From assembly GCA_053919585.1 (NCBI GenBank), contig CM132785.1: a DNA stretch of 64,000 nt; one strand, given 5' to 3'. This stretch comes from Euprymna scolopes. Lineage: Eukaryota. The position numbers were made by a program, and so were the translations under genes. Positions 1-64,000 of this stretch are shown in pieces (positions within the stretch are counted from its first letter, which is position 1; each line of letters opens with the position of its first letter). The notes beneath the pieces are model-generated. The model saw nothing but the letters and a program-made list of their open reading frames with translations, ran no database searches and was not told where the DNA came from.

Positions 1-353
1 CCTTCATAGTTTTAGCTCGTGTAAATAATGTATAAGAATGTTAAGCAGTATAAAATTATTGCATATCGTTTCTTCACTTTAAAACTATATGGATTAAGAA
101 AGGAAATTTTCTAATCCGTTTTATTGAAATTATGTGTTCACGAGTTTTACCAGTGCTTTGATTTTTACCGTTTAATTGATTCGTTTCAAACATTGCTAAA
201 GTTTACTGTTAAATTTTATTATTTATTAACAATTAAAATATATGTCACCATATGTTATTGAATTATATAATCAAATTAAAAATTTATCTGACGTGCCGAT
301 TAATTACATTGATTAAGATAAAAAAGTTAGTGATTTCAATTTGAATATCTAAC

Positions 354-1947: not shown

Positions 1948-1991
<44 letters not shown>

Positions 1992-4179
1992 AATAATGAA
2001 AATAAAAAGTTAAATATTTATATCTTAATAGAAACTTTATATGAATCAAGATGACATGTATTATGCATAGTTATGATATATTGGATAATCATCGATTGTT
2101 AACACTCTTATTATTATTAATGTTTATTTCTAACTCAAAATAAAACCATCTTATACATTTAATCGAATTTGATTACAAACTGTTCTTAGTATTTTTTAAA
2201 TGATGTTTAAAGACGCTAAAGTCTCACATAAAATTATCTCCATTTTTTAAATTTCTTATATGGAAGATTCTTGTCAAATATTTTTACTTTTCCGACTGAC
2301 AATATGCAAAAATAAAGAGTGAAAGAGAGAAGATACAGTGCGAACACAAAAGAGTTTATACAAATGAAAATTTTAATCCTCTCAACTAACCTCCTCGGCC
2401 AAGACCCAATCCTTCCATAGTGTTTCTAGCCTGAGCAAGGTCAAAATAAAGTTCCGGAAAACCGGCTTCCTCACACTCAGTTATGGCCTTTTCCAATTCA
2501 ACTTTGTTCTTGTGTTTAATTGCTGCCCTTAGTTGTGCACGGAGGGCCTCTGGAGTTTTCAGTCCTGATTAAGGTAATTATTAATTATTAATTATAAATA
2601 TTATTAATTATGAATAACTATTAGTGATTATAATCTCAAGATTATTTATTAGAAAGCTTCTTTATAAATGTTAAGTAGAATGAACATTGACATTATTGTA
2701 TGGATTGAACATTATCTACGTAAATGTCAAGAATAATTAACACGCAATATGTAAACCAATAAAATAAACACATAAGTTTATGAAAAAACCGCATTAGAAT
2801 CCAATCTCATACTTAATCAACATGTTTTAATGTATAAAATACTTTGTATTTCACAATTTTTTCTTTAAAATCTGGCTTCTCTACACGCGATTTTAATAAC
2901 TGCAAGACATGTAGATATGTTATGGTAATAATTAAAATCGAGTGCCGAGAGGACATATTTTATAATAAATAAAATTATGACATTAAAACTGTTAAAAACT
3001 TTCCAAGTTTGCTAGAGAATATTTGTATTCTATTCTAATGCGTCTTATATACGTTATGTGTTGTTATTTTTCGTTTACCAGTTATCGAATATATACTATT
3101 CGATAATTTACATGTTATTTATTTTATATAATTGTAAGAAAAATAATGTTGATATATTCATGAATTATAATCCACAGTTAGCTTATTATAAAATAGTTTC
3201 ATATATTTCAAATGTATTTTCTAGTCATGTGTATATAATTATAAATCAAATTTACCACGATAATAAATATTAGATCATTTAATAACTTTAAATGTTAGAT
3301 AAATCATTTAAGTATTTCATGCTATTTTAATATATATGAATCAGTATTCCAACCTCCTTGTCCTCCTTCCAGTTTGAATAAGGCCTCTCTTGCTTGATGA
3401 ATGTCGACATCAAGGCCTGGAAGACCAGCGGATATACTTTCGGTAATGGCGGCATTCAAGTTCTTCTTGTCATTTGATTTAAACGCTGCCTTCAACCGTC
3501 CAAGAAGATTGTCCAGCGAGAGATTTCCTATTAATCGAAGTTCGACGGTATTAAAGAGTTTGAATAAGAAAAGAGAATTCAATTTCTAACTTTTACTTTT
3601 TCCAGATTAAATTACTACAAATTTTTAAAAAATGTAAAATTGTGAATTTATATAAAATTCTGTTGATAAATTAAAATTTAAATGTGATACAAATTATATT
3701 TTATTTAAAAACTGGAAAATATTTTTTTAAAATTATTTTTTATATATATTTTCATGTGAGAATCTAACCTCCAAATCCGCCTCCTAATTTGTTGAGAGTT
3801 TCCCGAGCTTCACGAAGATCAAACGCCAATTCTGGATATCGGGATTCTTCAGCAATTTCAATGAGTTGTTCTAATTTCGCTCGGTCTTTGTTCTTTATAG
3901 CTAATTGCAGTTGAGTACGCAGTTTCTCAGGTGACAAATCGCCAATGGATATATCTATATGCAATAACAACCATCAGGTTTTAAAAGAAAATATCAAAAA
4001 TAAAATAATTAATGGTATTTAACATAAGTAAAATGAAACTGCAAATTAATAGTTCTATTCAATACACCGATTTTATTTTATCTTATTTTACATGTTAATA
4101 TTATATTTAAGTCTTTACTATTAATCTTATATGTATATAAATGACCGATTATAAATTTATAATAAATAGCTTATAAATT

Positions 4180-4233
<54 letters not shown>

Positions 4234-4640
4234 TGCAAGTTTATAGTAATAATAACAATAATAAGTTAATAAGTGTATAATAATACCAATGCTCGATCTA
4301 CAACATATAATAAAAACGATGTATGCACGGAGTTACGATCATAAATTTAGAATTGTGATGAACCTTATCCTTTCGTAAAGGATTTTAACTACTTTCTGAA
4401 AAGAGATGTACAGTAAAATGTTTTTCGTTTACGATAATAAATCGCAAAGTAAAGATTCGCACCTGCATCTCCATGTTTTTTACCGAACAAACTGAATTTA
4501 GGAGCTTTGAAATGGAATTGTGGGAACGACCATGATCCTGATAATCAAAATAAAAAAAAATGTCAAACACCTTTACTATATTCGATAAAAAAAATTCTAT
4601 ATTGTATTTCAACATTTTCTACCTTGAGTAATAAAAGATT

Positions 4641-4709
<69 letters not shown>

Positions 4710-7700
4710 TTACTATTTAATTGTTGGTATTGATATGAAGGAAATGTATTTGTTTATCACGATTTGAAATTGAATGTTGATGAAAATATGTATTTTAAGT
4801 TAGCATATCTATAACATTAATGCGGTAAGTGATTATCAAAAGGGAAAATAAATCGATAAACTTTTATTAAAATAAGAATTTACAAAAATATATTTAATTT
4901 AGAATACATATCGTTTAAATGCAAGTTAAATATTCTTTGAAAGTTCAGTTTACGAATCGCGAACTCTATAAGAAATCAAACGAATCGGAACAAACCTCTG
5001 TCAGTCGCTTCCAGAGAATCCAGATGGATTCTCGCTGCTTGGATATCAGGTAAAAGTTCTGGATATCCAGAACTGACACATTCGGCGATTACTTTCTCTA
5101 AAAGTTCTGGGTCGTTTTTCTTGATGGCACCATCAAGTTTCAGCCGGAGTTTGTCGACATTCAATTTTCCTAATAAACAAACCCAATTTCAAAGATGAAA
5201 CATATAAATCTAATATTGCTAGGATGTAAAATTAGTTATAAGTATATCTAAGTGAAGAATAATGTCAATTTACGTAAAAAAAAATTTTTAAACCGCACGA
5301 GATATTCTCTTTAATTTATTTTTATGAATACGTTGACAATATATTAGATGAGAGAATTCATATGTATTGATTGTATTCAAAATATTTTTACTGACGAGCA
5401 CTAAAAGAATCTAAACAATTGAGGTTTGATAAAGAAAAAGTGTTAATTTGTAAACTTGATAATAATAGTATAAGCTATACTTTAACATTTTTATTGCATT
5501 AATATTATTACAAAATATTTTACAACCTGATTTCCATATGATATAAATATATTAGTTCAAATATCTTAGTGTGTATTTTCGCTGAAGGACGCTAGTCGTA
5601 AAATATTTAATATAGATTTTATTTGTTTAAATATTCTGTTTGTGAGAGAATTAAAAATATAGAAATAGATAAAGAATAGAGAAAGTGATAAATAGTATTT
5701 CATCTACTAACCTCCACGACCAAATCCCAAACCATCCAATGTATCTCTGGCCAGACGGAGATCCAGAGCAAGTTCCGGATAACCGACTTCCTCACATTCT
5801 ATGATAGCTTGTTCCAGTGCTAGTTTGTCTTTATTTTTAATTGCTGCCTTCAGATCAGCGCGGAGAGCCTCTGGAGTCTTCAATGCTGATTGACGGAATT
5901 AGTGATGAGAAATATCTTGTTAAAGTATTAATTAAAACTACATATTTGTGAATATTTACTAGAAATTTTTACTAAGATGAATTTAATGTAATGCGTGCCA
6001 TTGTATGAAAATCAGCCATTTATTAATACTATCTAGAATGCTATTGAACAGTATATATAATATATTACAAATGAAGCTAAATGTTTGGTTTTACAAATAA
6101 TATTTCTAAACAAACGATTATTTTATTCGCGAATCTGAATATTAGCGTAGAATACCACAAAGTGATATAGCATCAATAAAAATGCAGCTTCATATGCAAT
6201 ACACTATATATTGTCAGAAATATTTTTAATATTAAGATAATATATACCAACAGCATATATAGATTTGGCCCATTTAAAAGTAGCCCAATTACAAGTCGAA
6301 TGAAAGATTGTTATTGAGAATTAAGCAGCGGAATTATGATTTTCATTGTGTACTTGATACTTGTGCAGTTTATGAGCCGTGTTATCTTTAGATTAGATTA
6401 TCAAATTAGAATTCCATTTTTACGGTATTTTTTGCTTATTAGTTTGTTAATTGAATGCATAGAATAGTTAAATAACCTCCTTAACAACAGCTTTCTAAAT
6501 AATAACGTTATTACTTCAGCACAGTCTGTAAATTGCGCAAGTACCGTGTATTTTGTGTGGATATTTGTATTCTTGTTCCACGAAAGAAGAAAACTTAATA
6601 TAGATTGGAGAGCAGTGTATCCATAATATAATAAACAAACTATCAAGGTTTAGAAATTGGGCTGCTTTTAATTGGATACCAAGATTTCATATTCAAATTT
6701 AAATGCTGTCATTTTTCATGTACATACGTATTTCTTAAAATCTCTTTCAATGTACAAAAAACATATTTTATCATTTATCATAACCTGATTCATTGTTTAC
6801 ATATAATTATAGAATTTTTAAAATCCCATTAAAATATGTTATATTAAAATGTATATTAATCACTGATCTAACCTCCTTTGCCGCCTTCTATTTGGAATAA
6901 GGAATCTCTTGCTTGTTGGATTTCAACATCTAGACCAGGAATACCAGCCGATATGCTTTCATTAATGGCTACATCGAGGGCTTTCTTGTCTTTTGATTTA
7001 AACGCTGCCTTAAGCCGCTCACGAAGCCATTCCAAAGAAAGGTTTCCTGACGATTGAACATCGATTTAGAAAAAACATTAAAATGCATTGAATTTATGTC
7101 ACTTACATAAAAAAACGAAGTTGTTATATTTTTGACATAATCGCATTATAATTAATTACATAAGAAGAAGATGTTTCATATTGACAGAATAATCGTTACA
7201 ATTAAACAATATAATTCAAAGTTTATAATACATGCATATGTAGATTTTTATATGTATATATACATACAAAAACATTTGAATCATTATATATAATTTTAAA
7301 ATACAGTACTGTTTATTTTTCCACCATTAATATAATATACATAAATATTCGTAATATGTATACCTCCAAATCCGCCTCCCATTTTGTTTAGTGCTATGCG
7401 GGCATCACGGAGATCAAAAGCCAGCTCTGGATATTTGGCTTCTTCTGCAAGCTCAATAAGTTGTTCCAATTTGTGCTTATCTTTAGCCTCTATAGCTAAT
7501 CGGAGCTGCTCACGGAGAGTATCCGGTGATAAGTCATCCAGAGAAATATCTAAGTAAAATGATAGTTCATTGTCAGGTATTTATATCACAGTTTAAAATT
7601 ATAACATCTTAATATTTGATTTCATTTTAAAATCATTATATTATTATAACATTATGTACTTTTTAAAAATTTATTATTTCATTGCGTAAATATGACGAAA

Positions 7701-12521: not shown

Positions 12522-12575
<54 letters not shown>

Positions 12576-34700: not shown

Positions 34701-35016
34701 GAATTTATTATCCATGATAAGGTTTAATTTAAAATGAGCACATGTATAAAATGATGCTAACCTGTATCTCCATATTTCTTACGGAACAAACTGAACTTTG
34801 GAAGTTTCATATGGAACTGTGGAAACGACCATGATCCTGATGATCAAAATGTAATAACGTTATTAGGGTTAGAATAAAGGAATTATTTATTTAGCGTAAA
34901 TGTGCAAATATTACCATGTAATTTATATGAATAACATAGTTAATGTTTTGTTTTTATTTGTTCATAGTACATATTCAGGAAAATAAGGTGAAGTTATTAA
35001 TTACTTTTAATTAATC

Positions 35017-42300: not shown

Positions 42301-43018
42301 GCATCGAGTCCAGGAAGACCAAGACTGATGCTGTCTCTAATGGTTGCATCCAAAAGTTTCTTATCTTTTGCTTTCAATGCTGCTTTATGCCGTTTACGTA
42401 GATCGTCCACGGAAATTTCTCCTAATAATGGAAAGTCGACTTAATTAAGAATAGAATAATGAACAGATCCTACAAATATATTAATTTGGGGGTGTTTAAT
42501 ATTAAATAACTTCAAAAATTAGGTATTAGTTGCAATACCTTAGGTCGTGTATTATTTTATATACTTCATAGTTTTTACGTATATAATTAAAGGATTAAAA
42601 TTTAAATATAAGTTAAACGAATAATTATAATAATGTACTTGTAAAATATGAAATTTCAAATTAGTAAATAATTATTTTGTTAATCTAACCTCCATATCCG
42701 CCTCCCAATTTGAAGAGTGCTTCCCTGGCCTCACAGAGATCGAACGCCAGTTCTGGATACTTGGCTTCCTCAGCAATGTCAATAAGTTGTTCTAATTTCT
42801 GTCGGTCTTTGTTCTTCGCAGCTAAGCGCAGTTGGTCACGCAATGCTTCTGGTGTCAAATCGTCCAAAGATATGTCTATTCAAAAGCAGATTTAAATACT
42901 CAGAAATATATTTCTATATCGTTATTAGTGAAATTAATACGAATTAATATGCATCGTAAATTATCTAATGTGAAACTCCCATTTATATCAATTATTAATC
43001 GCTTAAAATGTATATCTT

Positions 43019-55000: not shown

Positions 55001-58000
55001 TGGATATTTGGCTTCCTCAGCAATGTCAATAAGTTGTTCTAATTTTGGTCGATCATTGTTCTTCACAGCTAAGCGCAGTTGGTCACGCAATGTTTCTGGT
55101 GTCAAATCGTCCAGAGATATGTCTATTTAAAACCAGATTGAAATAGTCAGATATATATTTCCTTTCTTGTTGATTTAAATAAATTTAAATTATTGTATGG
55201 TAGGTCCTTATATAATTCAAATCAGTCNNNNNNNNNNNNNNNNNNNNNNNNNNNNNNNNNNNNNNNNNNNNNNNNNNNNNNNNNNNNNNNNNNNNNNNNN
55301 NNNNNNNNNNNNNNNNNNNNNNNNNNNNNNNNNNNNNNNNNNNNNNNNNNNNNNNAATTGTTTTTGCTATCTTTGTAGATTTAAATATTATTAATAAGCA
55401 AATGTGACTAGTATAAAAACTACGCTGTATTTTTTTTAGAAAATTATTACTATATATGCAACCCGATGGTCACACCATTTACACTTAGGGATATTAAAGA
55501 AATATATTAATTTTTGTAAAAGCGTATCGTTAATGTCAGATTTGTATGATACTTAGGTATAAAAATATGTAGATACAAAATTTATTTTGCCAATATATGA
55601 TGTGTCATAAGCATTTATGTTTTGTAATCTAGTATATGTTTTGCATTTAGTATTTTACATTCAGATATATTTCACCTTTAATTTTATGAAAATCATATAA
55701 TTAAAAAGTGATGCTAACCTGTGTCTCCATATTTCTTACGGAACAGACTGAACTTTGGAAGTTTCATTTCGAATTTTGGAAACGACCATGATCCTGGTAA
55801 TCGAAATGTAATAATATTATATAAAAATAGAATGAATGATATGGGAAAGGATTTCTTTAGTATTTTCATGATTGTATTTAATATATCAAAATATAATTGT
55901 TAATTTTACTGCTAATGTAATATAAAGTACTGATTGAGTTTAGTATTTTTTTTCTCTTAGTAAGTACAAATTAAGAATGAAGTTAAGCGATTTATCACGT
56001 TTTTATTATAACCATGTTAAATTCAGGAAGAAAACTGAAAAGATATATCAATCTTTTGATCTGTTTAAATGTACAAATGTGATTTAATTGTAAAATATTT
56101 TCAAATTAATGTAAAATTTGACATATTTTTGGAATATATTATTCAAATTAATTAATTTAAAACAACATATTATTAACATATCTAACCTTCAACGTCAGCT
56201 TCCATTTTTGGAAGTGCTTCACGGGCTTCTATCAAGTCAAGTTCAAGTTCTGGATATTGGGCTTTCTCGGCTTCCAAAATAAGTTTCTCGAGTGCGGGTC
56301 TATCATTGTTCTTCATAGCTAACCGCATTTGAGCACGTAGGTCTTCGGGTGGAATCAATTCGATTGTAACATCTACATAAAATTATTAGTTTATTTTTAT
56401 TTTAACATTCCAAATTGAATGATTAAAAATAAATCAATTTCAAAAATGTTTGTTACTCTACATCTACATGTGAATATCTAAGACTATAGCAAACATTAAA
56501 GTGTGAGATACATATTTCGATTGTTTATAATAATAATTATATTGTTAAGTGATAAGATTTCTGTATATGACAATTAAGTATTTATACTATTAAATAGTAA
56601 GGTACTAAACTTTTACATGTTTGATGAATTAAATTTTATTTTAATTATATTTCTATTAGTTTATTATTTATTCGTAAGTTATAATATGGCTTAAAAATTA
56701 TTCAATTTTTTACAAATTGTTACTTTTCGATTGTAAATTATAGTTATATACTTTATGTAAAGAAGGTTTTAAAACCGAACCTTTATCTTTTTTCTTCTTC
56801 GAGAAGAGTCCAAAGCTGGGCATTTTGATATTAATGTCTGGGAATGACATAGATCCTGATAACCAAAATAAAATAGTTCTATAGAAACATAATAAAACAT
56901 ACGATGGGACAAATACTTTCTTTGCAAAAATTCTTAATTTAACTTTCATTGATTTTTAAAAAATGATTAAATAATATTTTATAATAATTAAACCGTAATG
57001 TGGCATACTTAAAATGAATTCCGACGATCAATCAAAAATTAACGCAAATTGAAACGCAACCGAAAAATTCTGAAAGAATCATTTTTTTTTCATTTATCAG
57101 TAATTCTATACATTGTGTCAAAATATCAAATAGATTTAAATTTAGAACGACAATAATTTAAATGTTTTCCGATTTTGTATATGCAAATGATCGAGACGAA
57201 CCTTTGCCGCTTGCTTCTAAAGAATCCAGGTGTAATCTGGCTTCTTGGATATTTGGCATAAGTTCTGGGTGTCCGTAACTGACACATTCGTCGATCACTT
57301 TCGCTAAAAGTTCTGGATCGTTTTCCTTGATTGCACCCTTTAGTTTCAGTTTAAGGTCATCTACACTGAATTTTCCTAATAAAAAATGGCACAAATGTCA
57401 ATGACATGAACACTTTTTAGCTGATAAGTGGATTTACACTAGATTATATGAAATAAATACGAAATAAATCCATAATTTGTATTGATCATTAAGGTTGGGC
57501 AACAAAACATTAAAAAAAGATAATTTGAAATTATAGAGTACATAAAATGAAGAATCGAATGACAATTATATTTTCATGAAAAATTAACAGTTATGGAATT
57601 TTTATCGATAAAAGTTATAATTTGCTTAATAAAAATAATTCAGTTCCGTTAATAAACCAAAAGTTGTCACGATTTTATTAAAGTTAACTGTATATGACGA
57701 ATCAAAATAATTTAATTATTTTCTGGAATAATAAAAAAACGTTTGAATATAACAAGATTGGTGTATTCTGAGAAATAAAAATAAATTGAGAGATCCAACC
57801 ACGATTTACTTATGAACTACTGAAATACTAACCTCCACGACCAAAGCCCATACCGTCCAGAGTGTCTCTGGCCAAATTGAGATCGAGAGCAAGTTCCGGA
57901 AATCCGGCTTCCTCACATTCAAGTATAGCCTTTTCCAATTGAAGTCGGTCTTTGTTTTTGATTGCTGCCCTCAGTTGGCCACGGTGAAAGTCCGGTGTTT

Positions 58001-61000
58001 TAAGATCTAATTAATATAATTAATAATTATGTTTTGATAGTAATAATATAATATAATGTTATTATTTATACTTATTTGGGTAATTTTAAACTATTGTAGA
58101 ATGAAATTTAAATTTGTGAATAGTTACTTTGTATTGGAAAGCAGCATGAATTATAATAAAGGAAAAATTATCACATAAAATGCAAAATGACTTTGAAGCT
58201 TAAATTTACCTTGATAATTAATTTTAATATTATTTTTTTATTTACATTCATATATAGATCACCCTTAATAAAATAATTCTATTGTTATAACATGGAGGTG
58301 GGGAAATATACACATTTTACAAATTAAATATAAATTAAAAATTATATATATATATATATAATTATTTTGTTATGTTACTGTTATTAGAGATTAATATAAT
58401 GTTAATGGCTAAGGAGAGATTCATATTCAAAAGTGTATTCTAACCTCCTTTTCCGCCTTCCAGTTTGAATAAGGCAACTCTCGACTTGTGAATATCAGCA
58501 TCGAGTCCAGGAAGACCGAGACTGATGCTGTCTCTAATGGTTGCATCCAAAAGTTTCTTATCTTTTGCTTTCAATGCTGCTTTGTGCTGTTCACGTAAGT
58601 CGTCGATGGAAATATCTCCTAATAATTGAAAGTTAATTTATTTGAAAAACATAATATTCAATATATTTAAATTCATTAATTTTCGTGTTTGTTTATAATA
58701 AAATACTAATTAACATGATTTAAGAAATGTGGTTATATTGTCTTTGAATAATATTCTTTAACAAATCTAAATGATTTCTTCAAAGTTTTACTATAAATGA
58801 TACGGATTATTTACTGTACAAAATAGTTCTAAACTTTTACTATTTATAACAGATAATCATTTTTTAATCGAACCTCCATATCCGCCACTCAATTTGAAGA
58901 GTGCTTCCCGGGCCTCACAAAGATCGAACGCCAGTTCTGGATACTTGGCTTCCTCAGCAATGTCAATAAGTTGTTCTAATTTGAGTCGATCATTGTTCTT
59001 CACAGCTAATCGCAGTTGGTCACGCAATGTTTCTGGTGTCAAATCGTCCAGGGAAATGTCTGTATGAAATCAGATTCCAATAGTCAGAAATATATTTCAC
59101 TTTTTTATGATAAAGATAATGTAAAAGTTTTTATTTTTATTGTAATGATGTATTGACTTTCTTGATTATTAATGAATTGTTTTATATTGCGTTTATAAAA
59201 GCATTTATATTAGAATTATTTATTTTTCTATATTTAGCATTGCTAATGTAGCAATACGTTGTAATGCACCGATTTAAAGTATATATGAAATTATATTTTA
59301 TTTTTAAGACTCAAACATTCACAGAATTTATAATTTAAAAAATAACATAAAAATGCAAGCATTTTTTCAGCTAGGAAAAAATGTGTAAGGGACTTATACG
59401 TCCGAATATTAACACTAAATTTATTTATTAACACTTTATAAGAAATGCGCCATGTAAGGATGATGCTGTATTTCAGTATAAAATATTCAGATACTCAGAT
59501 TCAATGATAGCCTTAATGCTTGTTTTAAATCAAATCATCAATAAACTGATGCGAACCTGTTTCTCCATATTTCTTACGGAACAAGCTGAACTTTGGCAGT
59601 TTCATTTCGAATTTTGGAAACGACCATGATCCTGATAAGTGAAATGCAATATTATACAATATTAGAATTAATTTGACAGGAAATGATATAATTTTATAAT
59701 GAATTGCTTTTACTGATACTTCAGTGTGCACCAACTAGAAATACTTATATTTTATTAATAGTAAATAAGAATTTGAGAGTATATATTATAATGAAGGAAT
59801 TTTACCCATTATATAAGGTCGATTATTGCATAAATTAAGTTAAATTTTTTAGGTTAACTAAACAATATAATAATTGTTAAATGATGTTTATAAATGTGTA
59901 CATGTAATTAAAGCAAAATACGTCCAAGTAATTTAAAACTTTATAGAATATAATCTTTAAATGAAATTAGTGGGTGCAAACACTATATGATATACTTATC
60001 TAACCTTCAACATCCGCTTCCATTTTTGGAAGGGCTTCACGGGCCTCTTTCAGATCAAGTTCAAGTTCTGGATATTGGGCTTTCTCAGCCTCCAAGATAA
60101 GCTTCTCAAGTGCGGGCCTATCATTGTTCTTCATAGCTAACCGCATTTGGGCACGTAGGTCTTCGGGGGACATCAATTCGATTGTAACATCTATATAAAA
60201 TTATTACGTTTTTGTAGTTTTTTTATTAGAAACAATAATATAAATAAGCATTTTTTTTAATGTTTTATACATAATATTGCAATTCATCTACAAATTTAAA
60301 TCTCCCAAATCTAATAAAAATAAGCATTTAACTGTGATTTAATTTGATTTAAATTTGGAAATAATCGCTTGAGATTTAATTTTAAACGCATGCTCTATTA
60401 TAGCACAGTTTTAATGGAAATAATTTATAGTGTTATCTAGTAAAAGTTAGTTATTACCGTTTATATAATGAGAATGGCTTTTTTATTTGCAAATTTATAT
60501 ACCAACATTACGTAACGATATTTACAGAAAGTTCAATATATGTTCATAATATGATAGCGAAATCATTAAATATCTTATATTTTTCGTTCAATAATCGTTA
60601 CAGTTATAATTCATAAATAAGAAACTAAAAAATAGCGAACCTTTACCTTTTTTCTTCTTAGAGAAGAGTCCAAAGCTGGGCATTTTGATATTAATGTCTG
60701 GGAACGACAAAGATCCTGATGACCAAAATTAAATATGTTTTAATGAATTCAGAATAAATTTCGATATATTACAATCATTTTTAAACCACTCATTACCTTG
60801 AGTCAGAGTTATTTTTAATAAGAGAATTAATCATGTTTCATAATGTACTGAATGAAACTTATGATAAAATATGTATTTTACTCAGTTTAAAATTTTACAA
60901 ACGTAAGTTTTAGTCGATCAAAATTTGATAAATATTTTTCTATTAAAAATCTAATCAGAATTCGGAATATTACTGAATAAATTACACTTTAATGCAAATC

Positions 61001-64000
61001 AGAATGAAAACGTTTTTTTTTTCAGTTATTATAAGCAAATTATCGAGACGAACCTTTACCGCTTGCTTCCAAAGCATCCAGATGAAGTCTGGCTTCTTGG
61101 ATGTTTGGCATGAGTTCTGGATGTCCGTAACTGACACATTCATCAATTACTTTGGCCAAAAATTCTGGATCGTCTTTCTTGATTGCACCCTTTAGTTTCA
61201 GTTTAAGGTCATCTACACTCAATTTTCCTGACAAACAAATGATACCAATGGCAACGACATTAACACTTTCAACATGAAGTAGATTTAAGGCAGATTTTAG
61301 TATTGTAAAAATGTGAATTACCTACAGATATAATTAAATAAATTTAAATGTTATATTTAAAAACAAGTCCAAGGTCTTTACGGAGAAAACGAAATTTTTA
61401 TCGATTTATTTCTTACTAAGAACAGAAATTTAAAATGATGAATATTAAGATACATCAATAAACATTTCTGATAGTATTACGTTCATGTTTGAATATGTAT
61501 TTGATTAGAAGTATATACATTTATTTTATTTGTTTTATCATAAACTAGCATCAGTATGTTCACAGTAATAACGATGCACTGTAACACATAATGTTATAAC
61601 TGTGTCAGAGGTTTTAGCAGAGCATTTAGGAAAACCAAGATTAGGATACTGCGAGGGAGATTTAAGAACTAATAAATACAAACTGATACATTTATCAACT
61701 TCGAAGATACTAACCTCCACGACCAAAGCCCATACCGTCTAGTGTGTCTCGTGCCAAATTGAGATCGAGAGCAAGTTCCGGAAATCCAGCTTCCTCGCAT
61801 TCAATGATAGCCTTTTCCAATTGAAGCTTGTCTTTGTTTTTGATTGCTGCCCTCAGTTTGCCACGAAGAAAGTCCGGTGTTTTAAGATCTGATTAACGTA
61901 ATTAATTAACAATTATGATCTGACAGAAGTAATATAATATGCGATTGTTTTTACACTCATTTCAGAGATGCTAAATTATTTTATAACTATAGTTTCCATT
62001 CATAGATATTTTATTTGTATTAAAGAATAATAAACAACATCTATCAGAATATTTTATATCATAAGATGCAAGTCTGATACAAGTATGTTTCATATATTAT
62101 ATACATTTATATAAGTGTTTACATTCGAATATAGCAATTATTTATGATTTTACATGAACAACTCTTAATAAATGAATTAATAGATATAAAGAAATTTTAC
62201 TGCATTTAAACTCTATGATACATTTATTATTGTTGGGAAATATAGATATATCTTATATGATGTTAATGTTCTAAAATATTTATTTTATTTATTTACAATA
62301 TCTGCATTTATTAAAGAGATTTGTATTCAAATGTATATTCTAACCTCCTTTTCCGCCTTCCAGTTTGAATAAGGCAACTCTCGACTTGTGGATATCAGCA
62401 TCGAGTCCAGGAAGACCGAGACTGATGCTGTCTTTAATGGTCGCATCCAAAAGTTTCTTATCTTTTGCTTTCAATGCCGCTTTATGCCGTTTACGTAGAT
62501 CGTCCACGGAAATTTCTCCTAATAATTGAAAGTCGATTTATATGAAAATATAAAATTTTATATTTCGGATTTTTTAATAATTGTGTTTAAAATACAATGT
62601 TTGCATAGTTACATATGAATTAAAATACTTTCTTATGTTTTTCTTATCGATGATATATCAGATAATAATAATAATAATCAACAATTATAAGTAAAACATT
62701 AAAATATGAATATTAATATAACGAATTATTATCCATAAAGAGTTTCTTATTAGTTGGATTTTTACAATAAATAATCATCTTTTTAATCTGACCTCCATAT
62801 CCGCCACTCAATTTGAAGAGTGCTTCCCGGGCATCACAGACATCGAATGCCAGTTCTGGATACTTGGCTTCCTCAGCAATATCAATAAGTTGTTCTAATT
62901 TTGGTCGATCTTTGTTCTTCACAGCTAATCGCAGTTGGTCACGCAATATTTCTGGTGTCAAATCGTCCAAGGATATATCTATTCAAATTCAGATTACAAT
63001 AGTCAGCAAAATATTTCATATCGCTATGATAAAAATAATACGAATTATTGTATTGTTATTTATTGCATTATAATAATCTTTCTTCTCTTGTAATTATTGT
63101 ATCGGTCAGTTTATATATTTGTACATATCTTAAACTTGAAATTTATCCGTGTAGATTTGCATATATTTATCAATATGCTTTTATTAAGCATTCTACCCTA
63201 TACATAGATTTATGGTGAAATCAGAATAGAAAACAAATTTATGATTCTATGAATATGATGAAAACAATTAATCATTTGGAAATAGAATCAGTAATGAAAA
63301 TAATTGTATATGTATAAATATATCCATGTATATAAAAATAAAGAAGGTAGGAAATACGTAATGAATCATGCTGGCAATTATATTGCATTTAGTATTTAAT
63401 ATTTAAAATATAGTTTCTTTTAAAAAATATTAATATACTAAAATCGTGATTCGAACCTGTATCTCCATGTTTCTTACGGAACAGACTGAACTTTGGAAGC
63501 TTCATTTCAAATTGTGGAAACGACCATGATCCTGATAATCAAAACGGCAATAATAATCTCCTATAATTTTGTATAACTATATAAGAAAATAATGAAATGA
63601 TTATTTTTACAGTTAATCAATTACTGATGGGTTCCATTTTTTTTAATTTCGTAAATTGTAATCAACATGATATCAATGATTATTTAAATTACCTTGCCTT
63701 TCTGAGGTAAACAAATACGATATGATGATCATTAAAATAGGGTTTATATATTTACCCATTTAATTAAAATGTTATAATTAAAATTAATTTAAAAGTCTGT
63801 TTGTTATAGAATATATTATTTACATAAAATGAAAGGGTGCAGATGCAATATGATATACTTATCTAACCTTCAACATCTGCTTCCATTTTTGGAAGTGCTT
63901 CACGGGCCTCTTTCAGATCTACTTCAAGTTCTGGATATTGGGCTTCCTCGGCTTCCAAGATAAGCTTCTCAAGTGCAGGTCTATCGTTGTTCTTCATAGC
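354..64000 (-). CDS. Interior of a giant tandem-exon repeat gene (98 exons, ~14.9 kb coding); start and end lie outside the window
   Basis: Homologous GC-richer blocks in AT-rich DNA, each bounded by AG..GT on the minus strand, all phase 1-1, with class-invariant lengths of 75/174/186 nt (E 165-168, one D 183). No in-frame stops in the exons I translated or that appear in the ORF track. Family assignment (hillarin/KY-like tail) is recollection only. Confidence 0.88.
954..1028 (-). CDS. Exon class S* (75 nt)
   Basis: GSFSLPRLHVKRPSFRLFKKKHADA; gttcg donor. Confidence 0.82.
1578..1751 (-). CDS. Exon class A (174 nt)
   Basis: GKLSVDKLRVKLENAMKKNDPE...EESGK; gtttg donor. Confidence 0.87.
1949..1983. 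repeat. (TAA)n microsatellite
   Basis: Direct read. Confidence 0.9.
2391..2564 (-). CDS. Exon class B (174 nt)
   Basis: GLKTPEALRAQLRAAIKHKNKVELEKAITECEEAGFPEL...GLGRG; gttag donor. Confidence 0.87.
3354..3527 (-). CDS. Exon class C (174 nt)
   Basis: GNLSLDNLLGRLKAAFKS...LEGGQG; gttgg donor. Confidence 0.87.
3769..3954 (-). CDS. Exon class D (186 nt)
   Basis: DISIGDLSPEKLRTQL...GGGFG; gttag donor. Confidence 0.87.
4181..4229. repeat. (ATA)n microsatellite
   Basis: Direct read. Confidence 0.9.
4463..4537 (-). CDS. Exon class S (75 nt)
   Basis: GSWSFPQFHFKAPKFSLFGKKHGDA; gtgcg donor. Confidence 0.85.
4643..4706. repeat. (AT)n microsatellite
   Basis: Direct read. Confidence 0.95.
4996..5169 (-). 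CDS. Exon class A
   Basis: 174 nt, AG/GT, phase 1-1, class homology. Confidence 0.87.
5712..5885 (-). CDS. Exon class B
   Basis: 174 nt, gttag donor. Confidence 0.87.
6261..6687. mobile_element. Tc1/mariner-like MITE relic
   Basis: Inverted ends CCCATTTAAAAGTAGCCCAATT (6269-6290) and AATTGGGCTGCTTTTAATTGGA (6655-6676) in an enlarged intron. Confidence 0.6.
6873..7046 (-). CDS. Exon class C
   Basis: 174 nt, gttag donor. Confidence 0.87.
7364..7549 (-). CDS. Exon class D
   Basis: 186 nt, gtata donor. Confidence 0.86.
7991..8065 (-). CDS. Exon class S
   Basis: 75 nt, ASWSLPRFNLKAPKFSFFR; gttcg donor. Confidence 0.84.
8422..8751. other. Assembly gaps (8422-8568, 8614-8751)
   Basis: N runs. 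Confidence 1.
8824..8997 (-). CDS. Exon class A
   Basis: 174 nt, gtggg donor. Confidence 0.84.
10164..10337 (-). CDS. Exon class B
   Basis: 174 nt, gttag donor. Confidence 0.87.
10685..10858 (-). CDS. Exon class C
   Basis: 174 nt, gttag donor. Confidence 0.87.
11022..11207 (-). CDS. Exon class D
   Basis: 186 nt, gttag donor. Confidence 0.87.
11638..11712 (-). CDS. Exon class S
   Basis: 75 nt, gttcg donor. Confidence 0.85.
12115..12288 (-). CDS. Exon class A
   Basis: 174 nt, gtctg donor. Confidence 0.87.
12525..12573. repeat. (TA)n microsatellite
   Basis: Direct read. Confidence 0.95.
12983..13156 (-). CDS. Exon class B
   Basis: 174 nt, gttag donor. Confidence 0.87.
13574..13747 (-). 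CDS. Exon class C
   Basis: 174 nt, gttag donor. Confidence 0.87.
14496..14560. repeat. (AT)n(GT)n compound microsatellite
   Basis: Direct read. Confidence 0.95.
14678..14863 (-). CDS. Exon class D
   Basis: 186 nt, gttag donor. Confidence 0.87.
15560..15634 (-). CDS. Exon class S
   Basis: 75 nt, GSWSFPSFHFKAPKFSLFRKKHGDT; gtttg donor. Confidence 0.85.
16153..16326 (-). CDS. Exon class A
   Basis: 174 nt, gttcg donor. Confidence 0.87.
16868..17035 (-). CDS. Exon class E (Pro/acidic derivative of C, 168 nt)
   Basis: GSITPEITTPELSLKTKDTKSLDAF...DAPDAGKG; gttcg donor. Confidence 0.8.
17306..17491 (-). CDS. Exon class F (D-derived, 186 nt)
   Basis: EISVPTMSPEELRKQL...YPELELDLKMAREALPKLGVDFE; gttag donor. 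Confidence 0.85.
18005..18079 (-). CDS. Exon class S*
   Basis: 75 nt, GSFSLPRFQMKVPKFGMFRKKQGNA. Confidence 0.84.
18493..18666 (-). CDS. Exon class A
   Basis: 174 nt, gtgtg donor. Confidence 0.86.
19105..19182 (-). pseudogene. Decayed partial copy of a class B exon
   Basis: Plus-strand CTCTGATCAAACGGATATACAGAGAGCTTTAGGATAATCGAGTTGCTGACGTTTAATGAT aligns by eye to the B core with an indel; no splice sites. Confidence 0.5.
19256..19429 (-). CDS. Exon class B
   Basis: 174 nt, gttag donor. Confidence 0.87.
20093..20266 (-). CDS. Exon class C
   Basis: 174 nt, gttag donor. Confidence 0.87.
20626..20700. repeat. (AT)n microsatellite
   Basis: Direct read. Confidence 0.95.
20771..20956 (-). CDS. 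Exon class D
   Basis: 186 nt, gttag donor. Confidence 0.87.
21387..21461 (-). CDS. Exon class S
   Basis: 75 nt, gttcg donor. Confidence 0.85.
21896..22069 (-). CDS. Exon class A
   Basis: 174 nt, gtttg donor. Confidence 0.87.
22403..22816. mobile_element. Helitron/Helentron-like non-autonomous relic with internal GA-rich tract
   Basis: CCGGCATTGCCCGA (22411-22424) is an imperfect inverse of TCGGGCAACATCGG (22791-22804), followed by GTAACTTGCTAG; purine tract at ~22585-22730. Confidence 0.4.
22930..23103 (-). CDS. Exon class B
   Basis: 174 nt, gttag donor. Confidence 0.87.
23554..23727 (-). CDS. Exon class C
   Basis: 174 nt, gttag donor. Confidence 0.87.
24021..24206 (-). CDS. Exon class D
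   Basis: 186 nt, gttag donor. Confidence 0.87.
24736..24810 (-). CDS. Exon class S
   Basis: 75 nt, gttag donor. Confidence 0.85.
25321..25494 (-). CDS. Exon class A
   Basis: 174 nt, gtttg donor. Confidence 0.87.
25976..26149 (-). CDS. Exon class B
   Basis: 174 nt, gtcag donor. Confidence 0.87.
26570..26743 (-). CDS. Exon class C
   Basis: 174 nt, gttag donor. Confidence 0.87.
26985..27170 (-). CDS. Exon class D
   Basis: 186 nt, gttag donor. Confidence 0.87.
27703..27777 (-). CDS. Exon class S
   Basis: 75 nt, gttcg donor. Confidence 0.85.
28167..28340 (-). CDS. Exon class A
   Basis: 174 nt, gtctg donor. Confidence 0.85.
28690..28741. repeat. (TA)n microsatellite
   Basis: Direct read. 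Confidence 0.95.
29259..29407. other. Assembly gap
   Basis: N run. Confidence 1.
29484..29648 (-). CDS. Exon class E (165 nt)
   Basis: ARVSPEIDLPDVSVETKDTNTLGIF...LDEPDVGK; gttag donor. Confidence 0.8.
29901..30086 (-). CDS. Exon class F/D-variant (186 nt)
   Basis: DITLVDMSPEALREQL...YPEAELELRDAKDALAKLRGEFK; gttag donor. Confidence 0.85.
30301..30839 (+). mobile_element. Non-autonomous mariner deletion derivative
   Basis: Imperfect ~30-bp TIRs (TA-TCAAGTCGGTGCAAAGAATTTTGCTGGTTT / reverse complement TA-TCAGGATGGTGCAAAGAGTTTTGCAGATTT) flanked by TA; internal transposase relics HDNAR (~30490) and SDYYLFRGLKNQLGGFRF (~30582). Confidence 0.85.
31015..31089 (-). CDS. Exon class S*
   Basis: 75 nt, GSFTFPGFHMKVPKFSMFGKKHGSA. 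Confidence 0.84.
31455..31628 (-). CDS. Exon class A
   Basis: 174 nt, gtttg donor. Confidence 0.87.
32151..32324 (-). CDS. Exon class B
   Basis: 174 nt, gttag donor. Confidence 0.87.
33608..33781 (-). CDS. Exon class C
   Basis: 174 nt, gttag donor. Confidence 0.87.
34061..34246 (-). CDS. Exon class D
   Basis: 186 nt, gttag donor. Confidence 0.87.
34762..34836 (-). CDS. Exon class S
   Basis: 75 nt, gttag donor. Confidence 0.85.
35019..35064. repeat. (AT)n microsatellite
   Basis: Direct read. Confidence 0.95.
35293..35466 (-). CDS. Exon class A
   Basis: 174 nt, gtttg donor. Confidence 0.87.
35652..35714. repeat. (TA)n microsatellite
   Basis: Direct read. Confidence 0.95.
36633..36806 (-). 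CDS. Exon class B
   Basis: 174 nt, gtcag donor. Confidence 0.87.
37104..37277 (-). CDS. Exon class C (divergent)
   Basis: 174 nt, open frame, gttag donor. Confidence 0.82.
37565..37750 (-). CDS. Exon class D
   Basis: 186 nt, gttag donor. Confidence 0.87.
38285..38359 (-). CDS. Exon class S
   Basis: 75 nt, gtttg donor. Confidence 0.85.
38700..38885 (-). CDS. Exon class F
   Basis: 186 nt, DVTIELMSPEDLRGQL...LPKMKADVE; gttag donor. Confidence 0.86.
39251..39324. repeat. (TA)n microsatellite
   Basis: Direct read, one G interruption. Confidence 0.95.
39449..39727. other. Assembly gap
   Basis: N run. Confidence 1.
40582..40656 (-). CDS. Exon class S*
   Basis: 75 nt, GSLSFPDINIKMPSFGLFSKKKKDK. 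Confidence 0.85.
40945..41118 (-). CDS. Exon class A
   Basis: 174 nt, gtttg donor. Confidence 0.87.
41621..41794 (-). CDS. Exon class B
   Basis: 174 nt, gttcg donor. Confidence 0.87.
42248..42421 (-). CDS. Exon class C
   Basis: 174 nt, gttag donor. Confidence 0.87.
42690..42875 (-). CDS. Exon class D
   Basis: 186 nt, gttag donor. Confidence 0.87.
43408..43482 (-). CDS. Exon class S
   Basis: 75 nt, gttcg donor. Confidence 0.85.
43821..44006 (-). CDS. Exon class F
   Basis: 186 nt, gttag donor. Confidence 0.87.
44594..44668 (-). CDS. Exon class S*
   Basis: 75 nt, gttcg donor. Confidence 0.85.
45009..45182 (-). CDS. Exon class A
   Basis: 174 nt, gtttg donor. Confidence 0.87.
45637..45810 (-). 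CDS. Exon class B
   Basis: 174 nt, gttag donor. Confidence 0.87.
46256..46429 (-). CDS. Exon class C
   Basis: 174 nt, gttag donor. Confidence 0.87.
46653..46838 (-). CDS. Exon class D
   Basis: 186 nt, gttat donor. Confidence 0.86.
47119..47407 (-). mobile_element. 5S rRNA-derived SINE-like insertion (SINE3-type)
   Basis: Minus strand begins GGCATAATCACGTTGAGACACCTGTTCTTGCTGTATTACCGAAGTTAAGCAACGTTGAACGTGGTCAGTACTAAATGGATGACC, a degraded 5S rRNA, followed by ~180 nt of unrelated GC-richer body; absent from paralogous introns. Confidence 0.75.
47600..47674 (-). CDS. Exon class S
   Basis: 75 nt, gttcg donor. Confidence 0.85.
48030..48215 (-). CDS. Exon class F
   Basis: 186 nt, gttag donor. 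Confidence 0.87.
48808..48882 (-). CDS. Exon class S*
   Basis: 75 nt, gttcg donor. Confidence 0.85.
49244..49417 (-). CDS. Exon class A
   Basis: 174 nt, gtttg donor. Confidence 0.87.
49923..50096 (-). CDS. Exon class B
   Basis: 174 nt, gttag donor. Confidence 0.87.
50541..50714 (-). CDS. Exon class C
   Basis: 174 nt, gttag donor. Confidence 0.87.
50949..51134 (-). CDS. Exon class D
   Basis: 186 nt, gttag donor. Confidence 0.87.
51653..51727 (-). CDS. Exon class S
   Basis: 75 nt, gttcg donor. Confidence 0.85.
52088..52273 (-). CDS. Exon class F
   Basis: 186 nt, gttag donor. Confidence 0.87.
52887..52961 (-). CDS. Exon class S*
   Basis: 75 nt, gttag donor. Confidence 0.85.
53278..53451 (-). 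CDS. Exon class A
   Basis: 174 nt, gtttg donor. Confidence 0.87.
53855..54028 (-). CDS. Exon class B
   Basis: 174 nt, gttag donor. Confidence 0.87.
54492..54665 (-). CDS. Exon class C
   Basis: 174 nt, gttag donor. Confidence 0.87.
54937..55122 (-). CDS. Exon class D
   Basis: 186 nt, gttag donor. Confidence 0.87.
55228..55355. other. Assembly gap
   Basis: N run. Confidence 1.
55719..55793 (-). CDS. Exon class S
   Basis: 75 nt, gttag donor. Confidence 0.85.
56187..56372 (-). CDS. Exon class F
   Basis: 186 nt, gttag donor. Confidence 0.87.
56781..56855 (-). CDS. Exon class S*
   Basis: 75 nt, GSMSFPDINIKMPSFGLFSKKKKDK. Confidence 0.85.
57202..57375 (-). CDS. Exon class A
   Basis: 174 nt, gttcg donor. 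Confidence 0.87.
57833..58006 (-). CDS. Exon class B
   Basis: 174 nt, gttag donor. Confidence 0.87.
58445..58618 (-). CDS. Exon class C
   Basis: 174 nt, gttag donor. Confidence 0.87.
58874..59059 (-). CDS. Exon class D
   Basis: 186 nt, gttcg donor. Confidence 0.87.
59557..59631 (-). CDS. Exon class S
   Basis: 75 nt, GSWSFPKFEMKLPKFSLFRKKYGET. Confidence 0.85.
60005..60190 (-). CDS. Exon class F
   Basis: 186 nt, gttag donor. Confidence 0.87.
60641..60715 (-). CDS. Exon class S*
   Basis: 75 nt, gttcg donor. Confidence 0.85.
61054..61227 (-). CDS. Exon class A
   Basis: 174 nt, gttcg donor. Confidence 0.87.
61715..61888 (-). CDS. Exon class B
   Basis: 174 nt, gttag donor. Confidence 0.87.
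62345..62518 (-). CDS. Exon class C
   Basis: 174 nt, gttag donor. Confidence 0.87.
62793..62978 (-). CDS. Exon class D
   Basis: 186 nt, gtcag donor. Confidence 0.87.
63457..63531 (-). CDS. Exon class S
   Basis: 75 nt, gttcg donor. Confidence 0.85.
63868..64000 (-). CDS. Exon class F, truncated by window edge
   Basis: AMKNNDRPALEKLILEAEEAQYPELEVDLKEAREALPKMEADVE; gttag donor. Confidence 0.85.

What the first reader, a model, noticed from the sequence alone, without database searches (positions are those of the whole stretch)
349..63868. Splice donors contain an in-frame Gly-stop (G|GT TAG): a terminal exon turned into a repeat, or dozens of optional C-termini
Seen: 53 of 98 donors are G|GTTAG (D 12/16, B 12/15, C 14/15, F 9/9, E 1/2, S/S* 5/24, A 0/17). 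In phase 1 the unspliced read is GGT TAG, so B/C/D modules end cleanly as GRGG*, GKGG* or GF/YGG*. Inference 1: the ancestral module was a last exon ending GG-stop whose final Gly codon was captured as a donor, allowing tandem amplification. Inference 2: intron retention or intronic polyadenylation gives a ladder of lengths, each ending at a domain boundary. Caveat: GTTAG may persist simply because +4A/+5G favour U1 pairing.
Basis: partly seen in the sequence, partly recalled or inferred. Interest (0 to 1): 0.8.

Follow-up and report, generated by a model that had tools for sequence, protein, structure and literature searches.

The report
Splice donors that spell a stop
In one giant repeat gene of a squid, more than half of the exon ends carry an unusual splice signal (G|GTTAG) that reads as glycine-stop if the intron is left in, so unspliced copies would end exactly between protein modules; the pattern is real, special to this gene and old, but the stop may be only a side effect of an inherited splice signal.

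Summary
Confirmed. The minus strand carries 98 phase-1 exons of one giant repeat gene. No assembly gap touches an exon or donor.

The wider pattern is AG|GTTNG: +3 is T in 89 of 98 donors. This is not a genome habit. Fifty exon ends from myosin and kinesin genes of the same genome give GTAAG 26, +3 A 37, GTTAG 0. U1 snRNA is canonical.

Over at least 250 kb of the array, B, C and D module ends are GTTAG in 90 of 105. Octopus copies and about half of the deep paralogues in public data also stop right after the split glycine.

One public RNA contig of this genome has one intron of the array removed exactly at the predicted junction. It still holds the intron behind a GRGG|GTTAGT donor, so partly spliced RNA exists.

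T at +3 is kept equally well where it makes no stop, and other introns show no early stops. So I read the TAG as a probable by-product of an inherited, conserved donor type. The terminal-exon origin is not supported; a ladder of poly(A) ends is untested.

The scan noted the giant gene before on nearby DNA.

The parts
349..64000 (-). Part of a giant tandem-repeat gene: 98 phase-1 (1-1 symmetric) exons. Every exon ends in G and is followed by GT. Acceptors are ordinary (Y-rich)AG.
   Evidence: the array continues on both sides
52088..52273 (-). F exon of a representative super-repeat (three-helix module, ends ...EVEG); donor GTTAG
51653..51727 (-). a1 exon (25-residue short module GSWSFPKF..KLPKFSLFRKK); donor GTTCG, no stop
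50949..51134 (-). D exon (three-helix module, ends GGGYGG); donor GTTAG
50541..50714 (-). C exon (three-helix module, ends EGGKGG); donor GTTAG
49923..50096 (-). B exon (three-helix module, ends GFGRGG); donor GTTAGTAT
49420..49920 (-). Intron behind the B donor. Its words are held in RNA-run assemblies: 0.80, 0.49 and 0.36 in three small oligo-dT runs.
49244..49417 (-). S exon (helical module GKLSVDDL..., ends ESDRG); donor GTTTG, no immediate stop
48808..48882 (-). a2 exon (short module GSLSFPDINIKMPSFGLFSKKKK); donor GTTCG
63863..63868 (-). GGTTAG donor, F
62340..62345 (-). GGTTAG donor, C
61710..61715 (-). GGTTAG donor, B
60000..60005 (-). GGTTAG donor, F
58440..58445 (-). GGTTAG donor, C
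57828..57833 (-). GGTTAG donor, B
56182..56187 (-). GGTTAG donor, F
55714..55719 (-). GGTTAG donor, a1
54932..54937 (-). GGTTAG donor, D
54487..54492 (-). GGTTAG donor, C
53850..53855 (-). GGTTAG donor, B
52882..52887 (-). GGTTAG donor, a2
52083..52088 (-). GGTTAG donor, F
50944..50949 (-). GGTTAG donor, D
50536..50541 (-). GGTTAG donor, C
49918..49923 (-). GGTTAG donor, B
48025..48030 (-). GGTTAG donor, F
46251..46256 (-). GGTTAG donor, C
45632..45637 (-). GGTTAG donor, B
43816..43821 (-). GGTTAG donor, F
42685..42690 (-). GGTTAG donor, D
42243..42248 (-). GGTTAG donor, C
38695..38700 (-). GGTTAG donor, F
37560..37565 (-). GGTTAG donor, D
37099..37104 (-). GGTTAG donor, C
34757..34762 (-). 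GGTTAG donor, a1
34056..34061 (-). GGTTAG donor, D
33603..33608 (-). GGTTAG donor, C
32146..32151 (-). GGTTAG donor, B
31010..31015 (-). GGTTAG donor, a1
29896..29901 (-). GGTTAG donor, F-like
29479..29484 (-). GGTTAG donor, E
26980..26985 (-). GGTTAG donor, D
26565..26570 (-). GGTTAG donor, C
24731..24736 (-). GGTTAG donor, a1
24016..24021 (-). GGTTAG donor, D
23549..23554 (-). GGTTAG donor, C
22925..22930 (-). GGTTAG donor, B
20766..20771 (-). GGTTAG donor, D
20088..20093 (-). GGTTAG donor, C
19251..19256 (-). GGTTAG donor, B
17301..17306 (-). GGTTAG donor, F
14673..14678 (-). GGTTAG donor, D
13569..13574 (-). GGTTAG donor, C
12978..12983 (-). GGTTAG donor, B
11017..11022 (-). GGTTAG donor, D
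10680..10685 (-). GGTTAG donor, C
10159..10164 (-). GGTTAG donor, B
6868..6873 (-). GGTTAG donor, C
5707..5712 (-). GGTTAG donor, B
3764..3769 (-). GGTTAG donor, D
2386..2391 (-). GGTTAG donor, B
349..354 (-). GGTTAG donor, D
8422..8751 (.). Two assembly gaps (8422-8568 and 8614-8751) inside the intron between the S exon (8824-8997) and the a1 exon (7991-8065)
29259..29407 (.). Assembly gap inside the intron behind the E donor, 77 nt from it
39449..39727 (.). Assembly gap inside the 1.7-kb intron between a2 (40582-40656) and F (38700-38885)
55228..55355 (.). Assembly gap inside the intron between a1 (55719-55793) and D (54937-55122)

Best explanation
G|GTTAG is one form of a gene-specific, inherited type of ordinary U2-type splice donor, AG|GTTNG. 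All exon families of this giant cephalopod repeat gene carry it.

Shown:
- The donors are used for splicing at the predicted phase-1 positions.
- They pair with a canonical U1 at -2, -1, +1, +2, +4, +5 and +6 (B type also +7 and +8), with a single U mismatch at +3.

The in-frame TAG follows automatically from four things together: intron phase 1, the split glycine codon, T at +3, and consensus A and G at +4 and +5.

Inferred effect: whenever such an intron is left in, the ribosome stops right after the Gly-Gly linker that follows a three-helix module. The product has no junk tail, and the message is open to nonsense-mediated decay.

My reading is that the donor type is kept by stabilising selection on each family's splice site since the founding module. 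The stop is then a harmless or mildly useful by-product, not the selected feature, and not a programmed set of C-termini.
For: The pattern is real and gene-specific.
- 53 of 98 donors are GTTAG, and 89 of 98 have +3T.
- In 50 myosin and kinesin exon ends of the same genome, GTAAG is 26, +3 A is 37 and GTTAG is 0. Fisher p is 5e-20 for +3T and 3e-13 for GTTAG.
- All 28 readable U1 genes have the canonical 5' end.

The pattern holds across the array. B-type ends are GTTAG in 34/41, C-type in 23/25 and D-type in 33/39, over C3:154.43-154.69 Mb.

The donors are family-specific out to +6 to +8, for example B GTTAGT, C GTTAGAAT, S GTTTGT and a1 GTTCG. That fits inheritance plus stabilising selection.

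The donors are used.
- Contig L033 matches this genome at 99-100% identity, with a 336-nt piece missing exactly at the C|B phase-1 junction.
- The octopus annotation joins ...GYGRGG to the next module across a GTTAG donor.

The pattern is old.
- Synonymous sites between module families are near saturation (0.27-0.44 identity against 0.27 by chance), yet all families share +3T.
- In octopus, 4 of 7 donors have +3T and 2 of 7 are TAG.
- 61 of about 125 cluster representatives (50% identity) stop right after the split Gly.

The stop looks like a by-product.
- +3T is kept as well in families where it makes no stop (S and a types, 36/41) as in TAG families (about 91%).
- T to C changes, which turn TAG into CAG, are equally frequent in both groups (8/116 against 2/41).
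- Donors that lost TAG have no nearby replacement stop (read-through of 4-26 codons).
- The 45 other introns have first stops at the control distance (median about 9-14 codons against 9).
Against: - No splicing advantage of U at +3 is known, so stabilising selection does not explain why the founder's T was never replaced by the consensus A. +3 changes about three times more slowly than fourfold synonymous sites (about 10% against 26-30% changed).
- TAG is the only stop that keeps +4A and +5G, which is what selection for a stop would produce.
- One D copy has TAA, which keeps the stop at the cost of +5G.
- The gene has hundreds of introns, and partly spliced RNA is demonstrably present, so exposure to retention is high.
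- Sample sizes for comparing stop and non-stop families are small.
Confidence: 0.45

Rival explanations
1. The TAG is itself selected as a fail-safe. With hundreds of introns per transcript, some are often left in. A stop placed in the first intron codon ends translation at the flexible Gly-Gly linker. This avoids sticky tails encoded by AT-rich intron sequence and flags the RNA for decay.
For: - The immediate stop is present at 54% of donors against 4% in controls.
- 91 of 105 B, C and D ends across the array have an immediate stop, including one TAA.
- The stop persists in deep paralogues (61 of about 125) and in octopus.
- In phase 1, TAG is the only stop compatible with +4A and +5G.
- Partly spliced RNA exists.
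- Selection for early intronic stops, and donor motifs that contain stops (phase 2, GTGAGT or GTAAGT), are described in fungi (PMC2911113, PMC4991832).
Against: - +3T is equally conserved in S and a-type donors, where it makes no stop.
- The 45 non-TAG introns show no early stops.
- Donors that lost TAG are not compensated.
- Within families, +3T retention is not an outlier among fourfold sites: 10-40% of such sites are as conserved.
- Stopping at once rather than about 9 codons later is a very small gain.
Confidence: 0.27
2. The gene makes a programmed ladder of protein lengths. Regulated intron retention or intronic polyadenylation behind GTTAG donors produces many isoforms, each ending at a module boundary.
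For: - Every GTTAG donor would give a clean ...GG end.
- Intron sequence behind a GTTAG donor is held in oligo-dT RNA assemblies from three studies.
- Contig L033 keeps the whole intron behind GRGG|GTTAGT.
Against: - L033 also keeps its upstream intron and runs through the whole downstream intron to the next acceptor. That looks like unfinished pre-mRNA, not a polyadenylated isoform.
- AATAAA and ATTAAA are no more frequent behind GTTAG donors (1.9 against 2.2 per 300 nt). They are no more frequent on the sense strand than base composition predicts.
- Oligo-dT priming on A-rich introns can explain intronic reads.
- No 3' ends or peptides were examined.
Confidence: 0.1
3. Origin by capture of a terminal exon. 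The ancestral module was a last exon ending Gly-Gly-stop, and its last Gly codon plus stop became a donor, which allowed tandem growth. It concerns origin only and is compatible with the other readings.
For: - The only strong single-copy relative of the module sits at the extreme C-terminus of the KY/hillarin-like protein P0092.
- GTTAG looks ancestral to most helical modules. The commonest non-stop continuation in deep paralogues is Gln (CAG, one transition away).
Against: - The P0092 tail goes on for 8 residues after the GG position.
- The weak copies in other KY-like proteins are internal and continue.
- Non-helical a-type exons share GTT donors.
- No outgroup with a GG-stop end was found. 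No DNA was on record for P0092.
Confidence: 0.08
4. A dedicated recognition factor reads GUUNG donors: either a variant U1 snRNA with a compensating 5' end, or a protein that binds GGUUAG or UAG.
For: The donor class is gene-specific, and +3U is conserved in all exon families, which a trans-acting reader would explain.
Against: - All 28 readable high-scoring U1 copies have the canonical 5' end.
- The two genomic matches to a U1 start with the compensating change are not U1-like by Rfam.
- No protein factor was tested.
Confidence: 0.05

Closest known systems
Early in-frame stops in introns as a safeguard against intron retention, including donor motifs that contain a stop (Yarrowia lipolytica GTGAGT/GTAAGT in phase 2, PMC2911113; stops near the intron 5' end in fungi, PMC4991832)
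   Same: A stop is read in frame at the very start of an unspliced intron and forms part of the donor motif. The expected consequence is a truncated product and decay of the retaining transcript.
   Different: - There the stop lies in the consensus donor and works only in phase 2.
- Here the introns are phase 1, and the stop needs a non-consensus T at +3.
- It is confined to one gene family in an animal whose other genes use GTAAG.
- The same T is conserved where it gives no stop.
Giant modular proteins built from symmetric exons (titin PEVK and Ig exons, nebulin super-repeats); the AHNAK comparison is from my own knowledge
   Same: - There are hundreds of tandem exons, one module per exon, all in the same phase, so any subset keeps the frame.
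- The exons are organised in super-repeats: 7 exons of about 3.9 kb in the upper half of the window and 5 exons in the lower half.
   Different: - The modules are 58-residue three-helix bundles with Gly linkers, plus 25-residue basic short repeats. They are not Ig, PEVK or nebulin repeats.
- No Pfam family matches.
- The resemblance of the short repeat to AHNAK is recalled, not tested.
KY / hillarin family (Transglut_core plus Ig-like_KY)
   Same: The helical module matches the C-terminal tail of the KY-like protein P0092 (E = 3.9e-11 with the module profile). It matches weakly the tail regions of mollusc, bryozoan and leech KY-like proteins.
   Different: The window encodes no transglutaminase-like or Ig-like_KY domain. 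Only the tail module is shared, and here it is amplified hundreds of times.
Non-consensus 5' splice sites with a pyrimidine at +3
   Same: The site is GT-AG and U1-dependent, with a mismatch at +3 compensated by full pairing elsewhere.
   Different: Such sites are normally a scattered minority: at most 8 of 50 in this genome's control set, several of them doubtful. Here they make up about 90% of one gene's donors and are conserved between squid and octopus.

Membership tests
U2-type GT-AG intron | GT at +1 and +2, AG at the intron end, and a pyrimidine-rich tract before the AG | tested here: met
   All 98 donors are G|GT, preceded by AG in all but one. Acceptors are of the form ttatcag|, ttaatag|.
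U2-type GT-AG intron | The predicted junctions are used in RNA | tested here: met
   L033 lacks 336 nt of this genome exactly at a C|B phase-1 junction. The octopus gene model joins modules across a GTTAG donor. Only a few junctions could be checked.
U2-type GT-AG intron | The donor is complementary to the canonical U1 5' end | tested here: met
   U1 starts ATACTTACCTG in 28 of 28 readable copies. The donors match at -2, -1, +1, +2, +5, mostly at +4 and +6, but not at +3.
U12-type intron | Donor /RTATCCTT | tested here: not met
   No donor has this motif.
Fail-safe stop at the intron start (linked to nonsense-mediated decay) | An in-frame stop within the first intron codons, more often than chance | tested here: met
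   53 of 98 donors against 4% in control frames. This holds only in the B, C, D and F families and a few a and E exons.
Fail-safe stop at the intron start (linked to nonsense-mediated decay) | Introns are in fact retained in RNA | tested here: inconclusive
   There is one partly spliced contig and intron words in small RNA assemblies. Whether the RNA is nuclear or cytoplasmic, and how much there is, are unknown.
Fail-safe stop at the intron start (linked to nonsense-mediated decay) | The stop itself is under selection | tested here: inconclusive
   The stop persists deeply across families and species. But +3T is equally kept in non-stop donors, and there are no compensating stops.
Alternative C-termini by intronic polyadenylation | Poly(A) signals or 3' ends behind the donors | tested here: inconclusive
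   Hexamer counts are not enriched. 3' ends could not be examined, because the single read-laying run was lost to a filter.
KY / hillarin family | Transglutaminase-like core and Ig-like_KY domains | tested here: not met
   No Pfam hit in any module of the window. P0092 has both domains.
AHNAK-like repeats | Sequence similarity of the short a-type exons to AHNAK repeat units | tested here: inconclusive
   Pfam gave nothing. The PDB profile search returned only Strep-tag look-alikes. The resemblance is from memory.

The most novel reading that the evidence does not exclude
AG|GUUAG is a selected dual-purpose signal, both splice donor and stop codon. It would turn each of several hundred introns of a titin-sized gene into a switch. 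Splice, and the chain grows by one module. Skip splicing, and a clean, functional shorter protein ends at the linker. One gene would then yield a tunable ladder of lengths, possibly read by a factor that prefers +3U donors.
Probability: 0.1. Interest if true: 0.8.

Novelty: new variant of a known kind. Interest (0 to 1): 0.55.

Why it matters
- **Annotation.** A glycine-stop at the end of most exons makes ORF callers and gene predictors break this gene into hundreds of small "proteins" ending ...GG. More than 100 such fragments are in public protein sets, and the octopus locus carries a 192-residue model inside a 5242-residue one. Knowing the donor type lets the giant gene be assembled correctly.
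- **Splicing biology.** About 90% of the donors of one gene use a base at +3 that the same genome's other genes rarely use, and the pattern is conserved between squid and octopus. This is a natural test of how much +3 matters and of how splice sites in tandem exon arrays are kept uniform.
- **Evolution.** The phase-1 counterpart of the stop-containing donors known from phase-2 introns in yeasts can be tested here. The same gene offers donors with and without the stop as internal controls.

Tried and rejected
- **Read-level evidence.** No depth, joints or 3' ends could be seen.
- **Variant U1 snRNA.** Rejected within the limits of the search.
- **Genome habit.** Rejected, since control donors are GTAAG.
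- **Recent amplification as the whole explanation.** Rejected. Introns of same-family copies cannot be aligned beyond about +8. Synonymous sites are 50-68% identical within families and near saturation between families. A first identity measure was useless: unrelated introns scored 0.76.
- **Poly(A) hexamer enrichment.** None found.
- **Compensating early stops where TAG is lost.** None found.
- **KY-like homologues ending at GG.** None found. The region-only search found only the query itself.
- **Pfam on modules.** No hits.
- **Protein atlas.** Only unnamed clusters below the useful score.
- **PDB search with the short module.** Only Strep-tag look-alikes.
- **Literature on cephalopod AHNAK.** One passing mention in an octopus mucus proteome.

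Full report
**What is in the window**

The sequence is AT-rich (about 27% G+C). Earlier notes of this scan say it comes from a squid genome. That genome is 5.9 Gb, and the window is C3:154566001-154630000.

The minus strand carries a long series of short open frames that repeat in a fixed order. I placed splice sites by frame, by family-typical exon length and by the pyrimidine tract. This gives 98 exons, all in phase 1 on both sides. One exon was corrected by hand.

There are five families of helical modules of 58-62 residues:
- B ends GFGRGG.
- C ends EGGKGG.
- D ends GGGY/FGG.
- F ends ...VEG.
- S starts GKLSVD.

There are also two families of 25-residue basic short exons (a1, a2) and two odd E exons.

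The five helical families align over their whole length at 33-53% identity, with the same exon limits. They therefore descend from one module exon. AlphaFold predicts a three-helix bundle followed by a disordered Gly-rich end (mean pLDDT 77). Pfam has no family for any module.

**The observation**

- GGTTAG occurs 57 times on the minus strand and 4 times on the plus strand.
- 53 of the 57 sit exactly at module ends, where GGT TAG is in frame.
- In control frames of the same introns, the first codon is a stop in 4% of cases and the median distance to a stop is 9 codons. So 53 of 98 is far beyond chance.
- The five N runs are all inside introns, at least 73 nt from any donor. The count does not depend on them.

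**The wider pattern**

The five bases after each exon are as follows:

| Donor +1 to +5 | Count |
|---|---|
| GTTAG | 53 |
| GTTCG | 21 |
| GTTTG | 13 |
| GTCAG | 3 |
| GTCTG | 2 |
| Six other forms | 1 each |

- +3 is T in 89 of 98 donors, C in 5, G in 3 and A in 1.
- +5 is G in nearly all donors, and -2/-1 is AG in all but one.
- The S exons use GTTTGT and the short exons use GTTCG.

So TAG is the form that the general motif AG|GTTNG takes in the B, C, D and F families.

**Is it the genome's habit? No.**

I took 50 exon ends of myosin and kinesin motor genes of the same genome. An unsupervised one-site-per-sequence model chose the donors.
- The result is the ordinary AG|GTAAGT.
- GTAAG occurs 26 times and GTTAG 0 times.
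- +3 is A in 37 and T in 8, and several of the 8 are doubtful picks.
- The differences are extreme.

The U1 snRNA genes have the canonical 5' end in all 28 readable copies. Two genomic matches to a U1 start carrying the compensating change are not U1-like.

**Extent and age**

Pattern searches of the whole genome list the module ends over C3:154.43-154.69 Mb, all on the minus strand.

| Module type | GTTAG | Other forms |
|---|---|---|
| B | 34 of 41 | 6 GTCAG, 1 GTTCG |
| C | 23 of 25 | GTTGG, GTACA |
| D | 33 of 39 | 2 GTCAG, plus TAA (also a stop), TCG, ATA and TAT once each |

A related two-module exon lies at C3:154.944 Mb. The array is therefore at least 250 kb long and probably more than 500 kb.

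Evidence on age within the window:
- Introns of same-family copies cannot be aligned beyond about +8.
- Fourfold synonymous sites are 50-68% identical within families.
- Between families they are near saturation (0.27-0.44 against 0.27 by chance).
- Yet all families share T at +3.

Evidence from other species:
- In Octopus bimaculoides (GCA_001194135.2) a 23-kb stretch of the homologous gene has seven modules. Their donors are GTTTG, GTGAG, GTTAG, GTAAG, GTTAG, GTTGG and GTAAC.
- A profile of the module finds only 220 proteins among 1.84 billion cluster representatives.
- Of about 125 short fragments that reach the module end, 61 stop one residue (Gly) later.
- The commonest continuation is Gln (CAG, one transition from TAG), and Lys (AAG) occurs once.
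- A contig from another species, 77% identical in the exon, also has GRGG|GTTAGT.

GTTAG is therefore old and probably ancestral for the helical modules.

**Are the donors used, and are introns retained?**

Contig L033, from a public run, matches this genome at 99-100% identity in two pieces, C3:154500093-154500519 and C3:154498518-154499756.
- The 336 nt between the pieces are missing exactly at the predicted C|B junction. The 3-nt overlap is what a GT...AG intron gives.
- The contig still holds 250 nt of the upstream intron. It also holds the whole 1064-nt intron behind GRGG|GTTAGT, up to the next acceptor.
- I read this as partly spliced RNA. It shows the predicted junction in use, and it shows that RNA with a retained GTTAG intron exists.

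Supporting points:
- The intron at 49420-49920 is held at shares of 0.80, 0.49 and 0.36 in three oligo-dT RNA assemblies of 143-281 million letters.
- It is also held in runs of two further studies.
- Such small data sets could not assemble it from stray genomic DNA of a 5.9-Gb genome.

None of this shows mature or polyadenylated isoforms. My single read-laying run was lost to a filter.

**Selected stop, or by-product?**

For selection of the stop:
- The stop persists deeply across families and species.
- No splicing benefit of +3U is known.
- +3 changes about three times more slowly than fourfold sites: about 10% changed against 26-30%.
- In phase 1, TAG is the only stop that keeps consensus +4A and +5G.
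- Donor motifs containing stops are known to serve this purpose in phase-2 introns of Yarrowia. Early intronic stops appear selected in fungi.

Against selection of the stop:
- T at +3 is kept as well in S and a-type donors, where it makes no stop (36 of 41), as in TAG families (about 91%).
- T to C changes are equally frequent in both groups.
- Within each family, +3T retention is matched by 10-40% of fourfold sites.
- Donors that lost TAG have no nearby replacement stop.
- The 45 other introns have stops at the control distance.
- Each family conserves its own donor out to +6 to +8. That looks like stabilising selection on an inherited site.

I therefore put the by-product reading first (0.45) and the selected fail-safe second (0.27). 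Either way the effect is the same: an unspliced GTTAG intron ends translation right after the linker.

The module is related to the C-terminal tail of a KY/hillarin-like protein. P0092 has Transglut_core plus Ig-like_KY, with the module at residues 788-842 of 851.
- That tail continues 8 residues past the GG position.
- The weaker copies in other lophotrochozoan KY-like proteins are internal.
- So the captured-last-exon origin is not supported, though it is not excluded.

The ladder idea has its first step (retention) but nothing more. Poly(A) hexamers are not enriched behind GTTAG donors or on the sense strand.

**Verdict**

This is a real, striking and conserved gene-specific class of splice donors. 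More than half of them spell an in-frame stop. It is a new variant of known themes: stops at intron starts, and giant genes built from symmetric exons. Whether the stop has a function is open, and it can be tested with existing raw RNA reads.

Noticed in passing
window 51654-51728 and the other a1 exons: The start of the short a1 module (GSWSFPQFE) resembles the laboratory Strep-tag II. The only PDB matches to the a-type profile are tagged constructs. I take this as coincidence, but it could give false hits in tag-based searches.
   Followed up: partly
window 47104-47359 (minus strand), in the intron between a1 (47600-47674) and D (46653-46838): A stretch of about 250 nt is open in all three minus-strand frames and richer in G+C than the surrounding intron. 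This intron (761 nt) is longer than its counterparts. It may be an inserted short mobile element.
   Followed up: no
window 29484-29648 and 16868-17035: Two E exons sit where a C module is expected. They lack the helical pattern (acidic, Pro-rich, ...LGLPG...DVGKG). They look like a degenerate or different module type.
   Followed up: no
G000:C3:154944035-154944406 (outside the window) and L096: One exon holds two helical modules with no intron between them. It is conserved at 77% identity in another species, again followed by GTTAGT. Two-module exons also occur on large genomic contigs of another assembly (P0005, P0006).
   Followed up: partly
G000:C46:150-212 Mb, C36 and others (L001-L030): U1 snRNA genes fall into at least three subtypes that differ just after the splice-site-pairing end (continuing GGTA, GATG or GGCA). 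A large cluster lies on contig C46.
   Followed up: no
many contigs of G000: A dispersed repeat containing TTTGGTCGGGGAGGTCATTWA matches the B-type exon-end pattern by chance. It is probably a mobile element.
   Followed up: no
window, many introns (for example 4630-4700, 1950-1985, 4180-4225): Long (TA)n and (ATA)n microsatellites occur inside the introns of the array.
   Followed up: no
window 0-37 kb versus 38-64 kb: The repeat unit changes from 5 exons (a1 D C B S) in the lower half to 7 exons (F a1 D C B S a2) in the upper half. The upper copies are more alike.
   Followed up: partly
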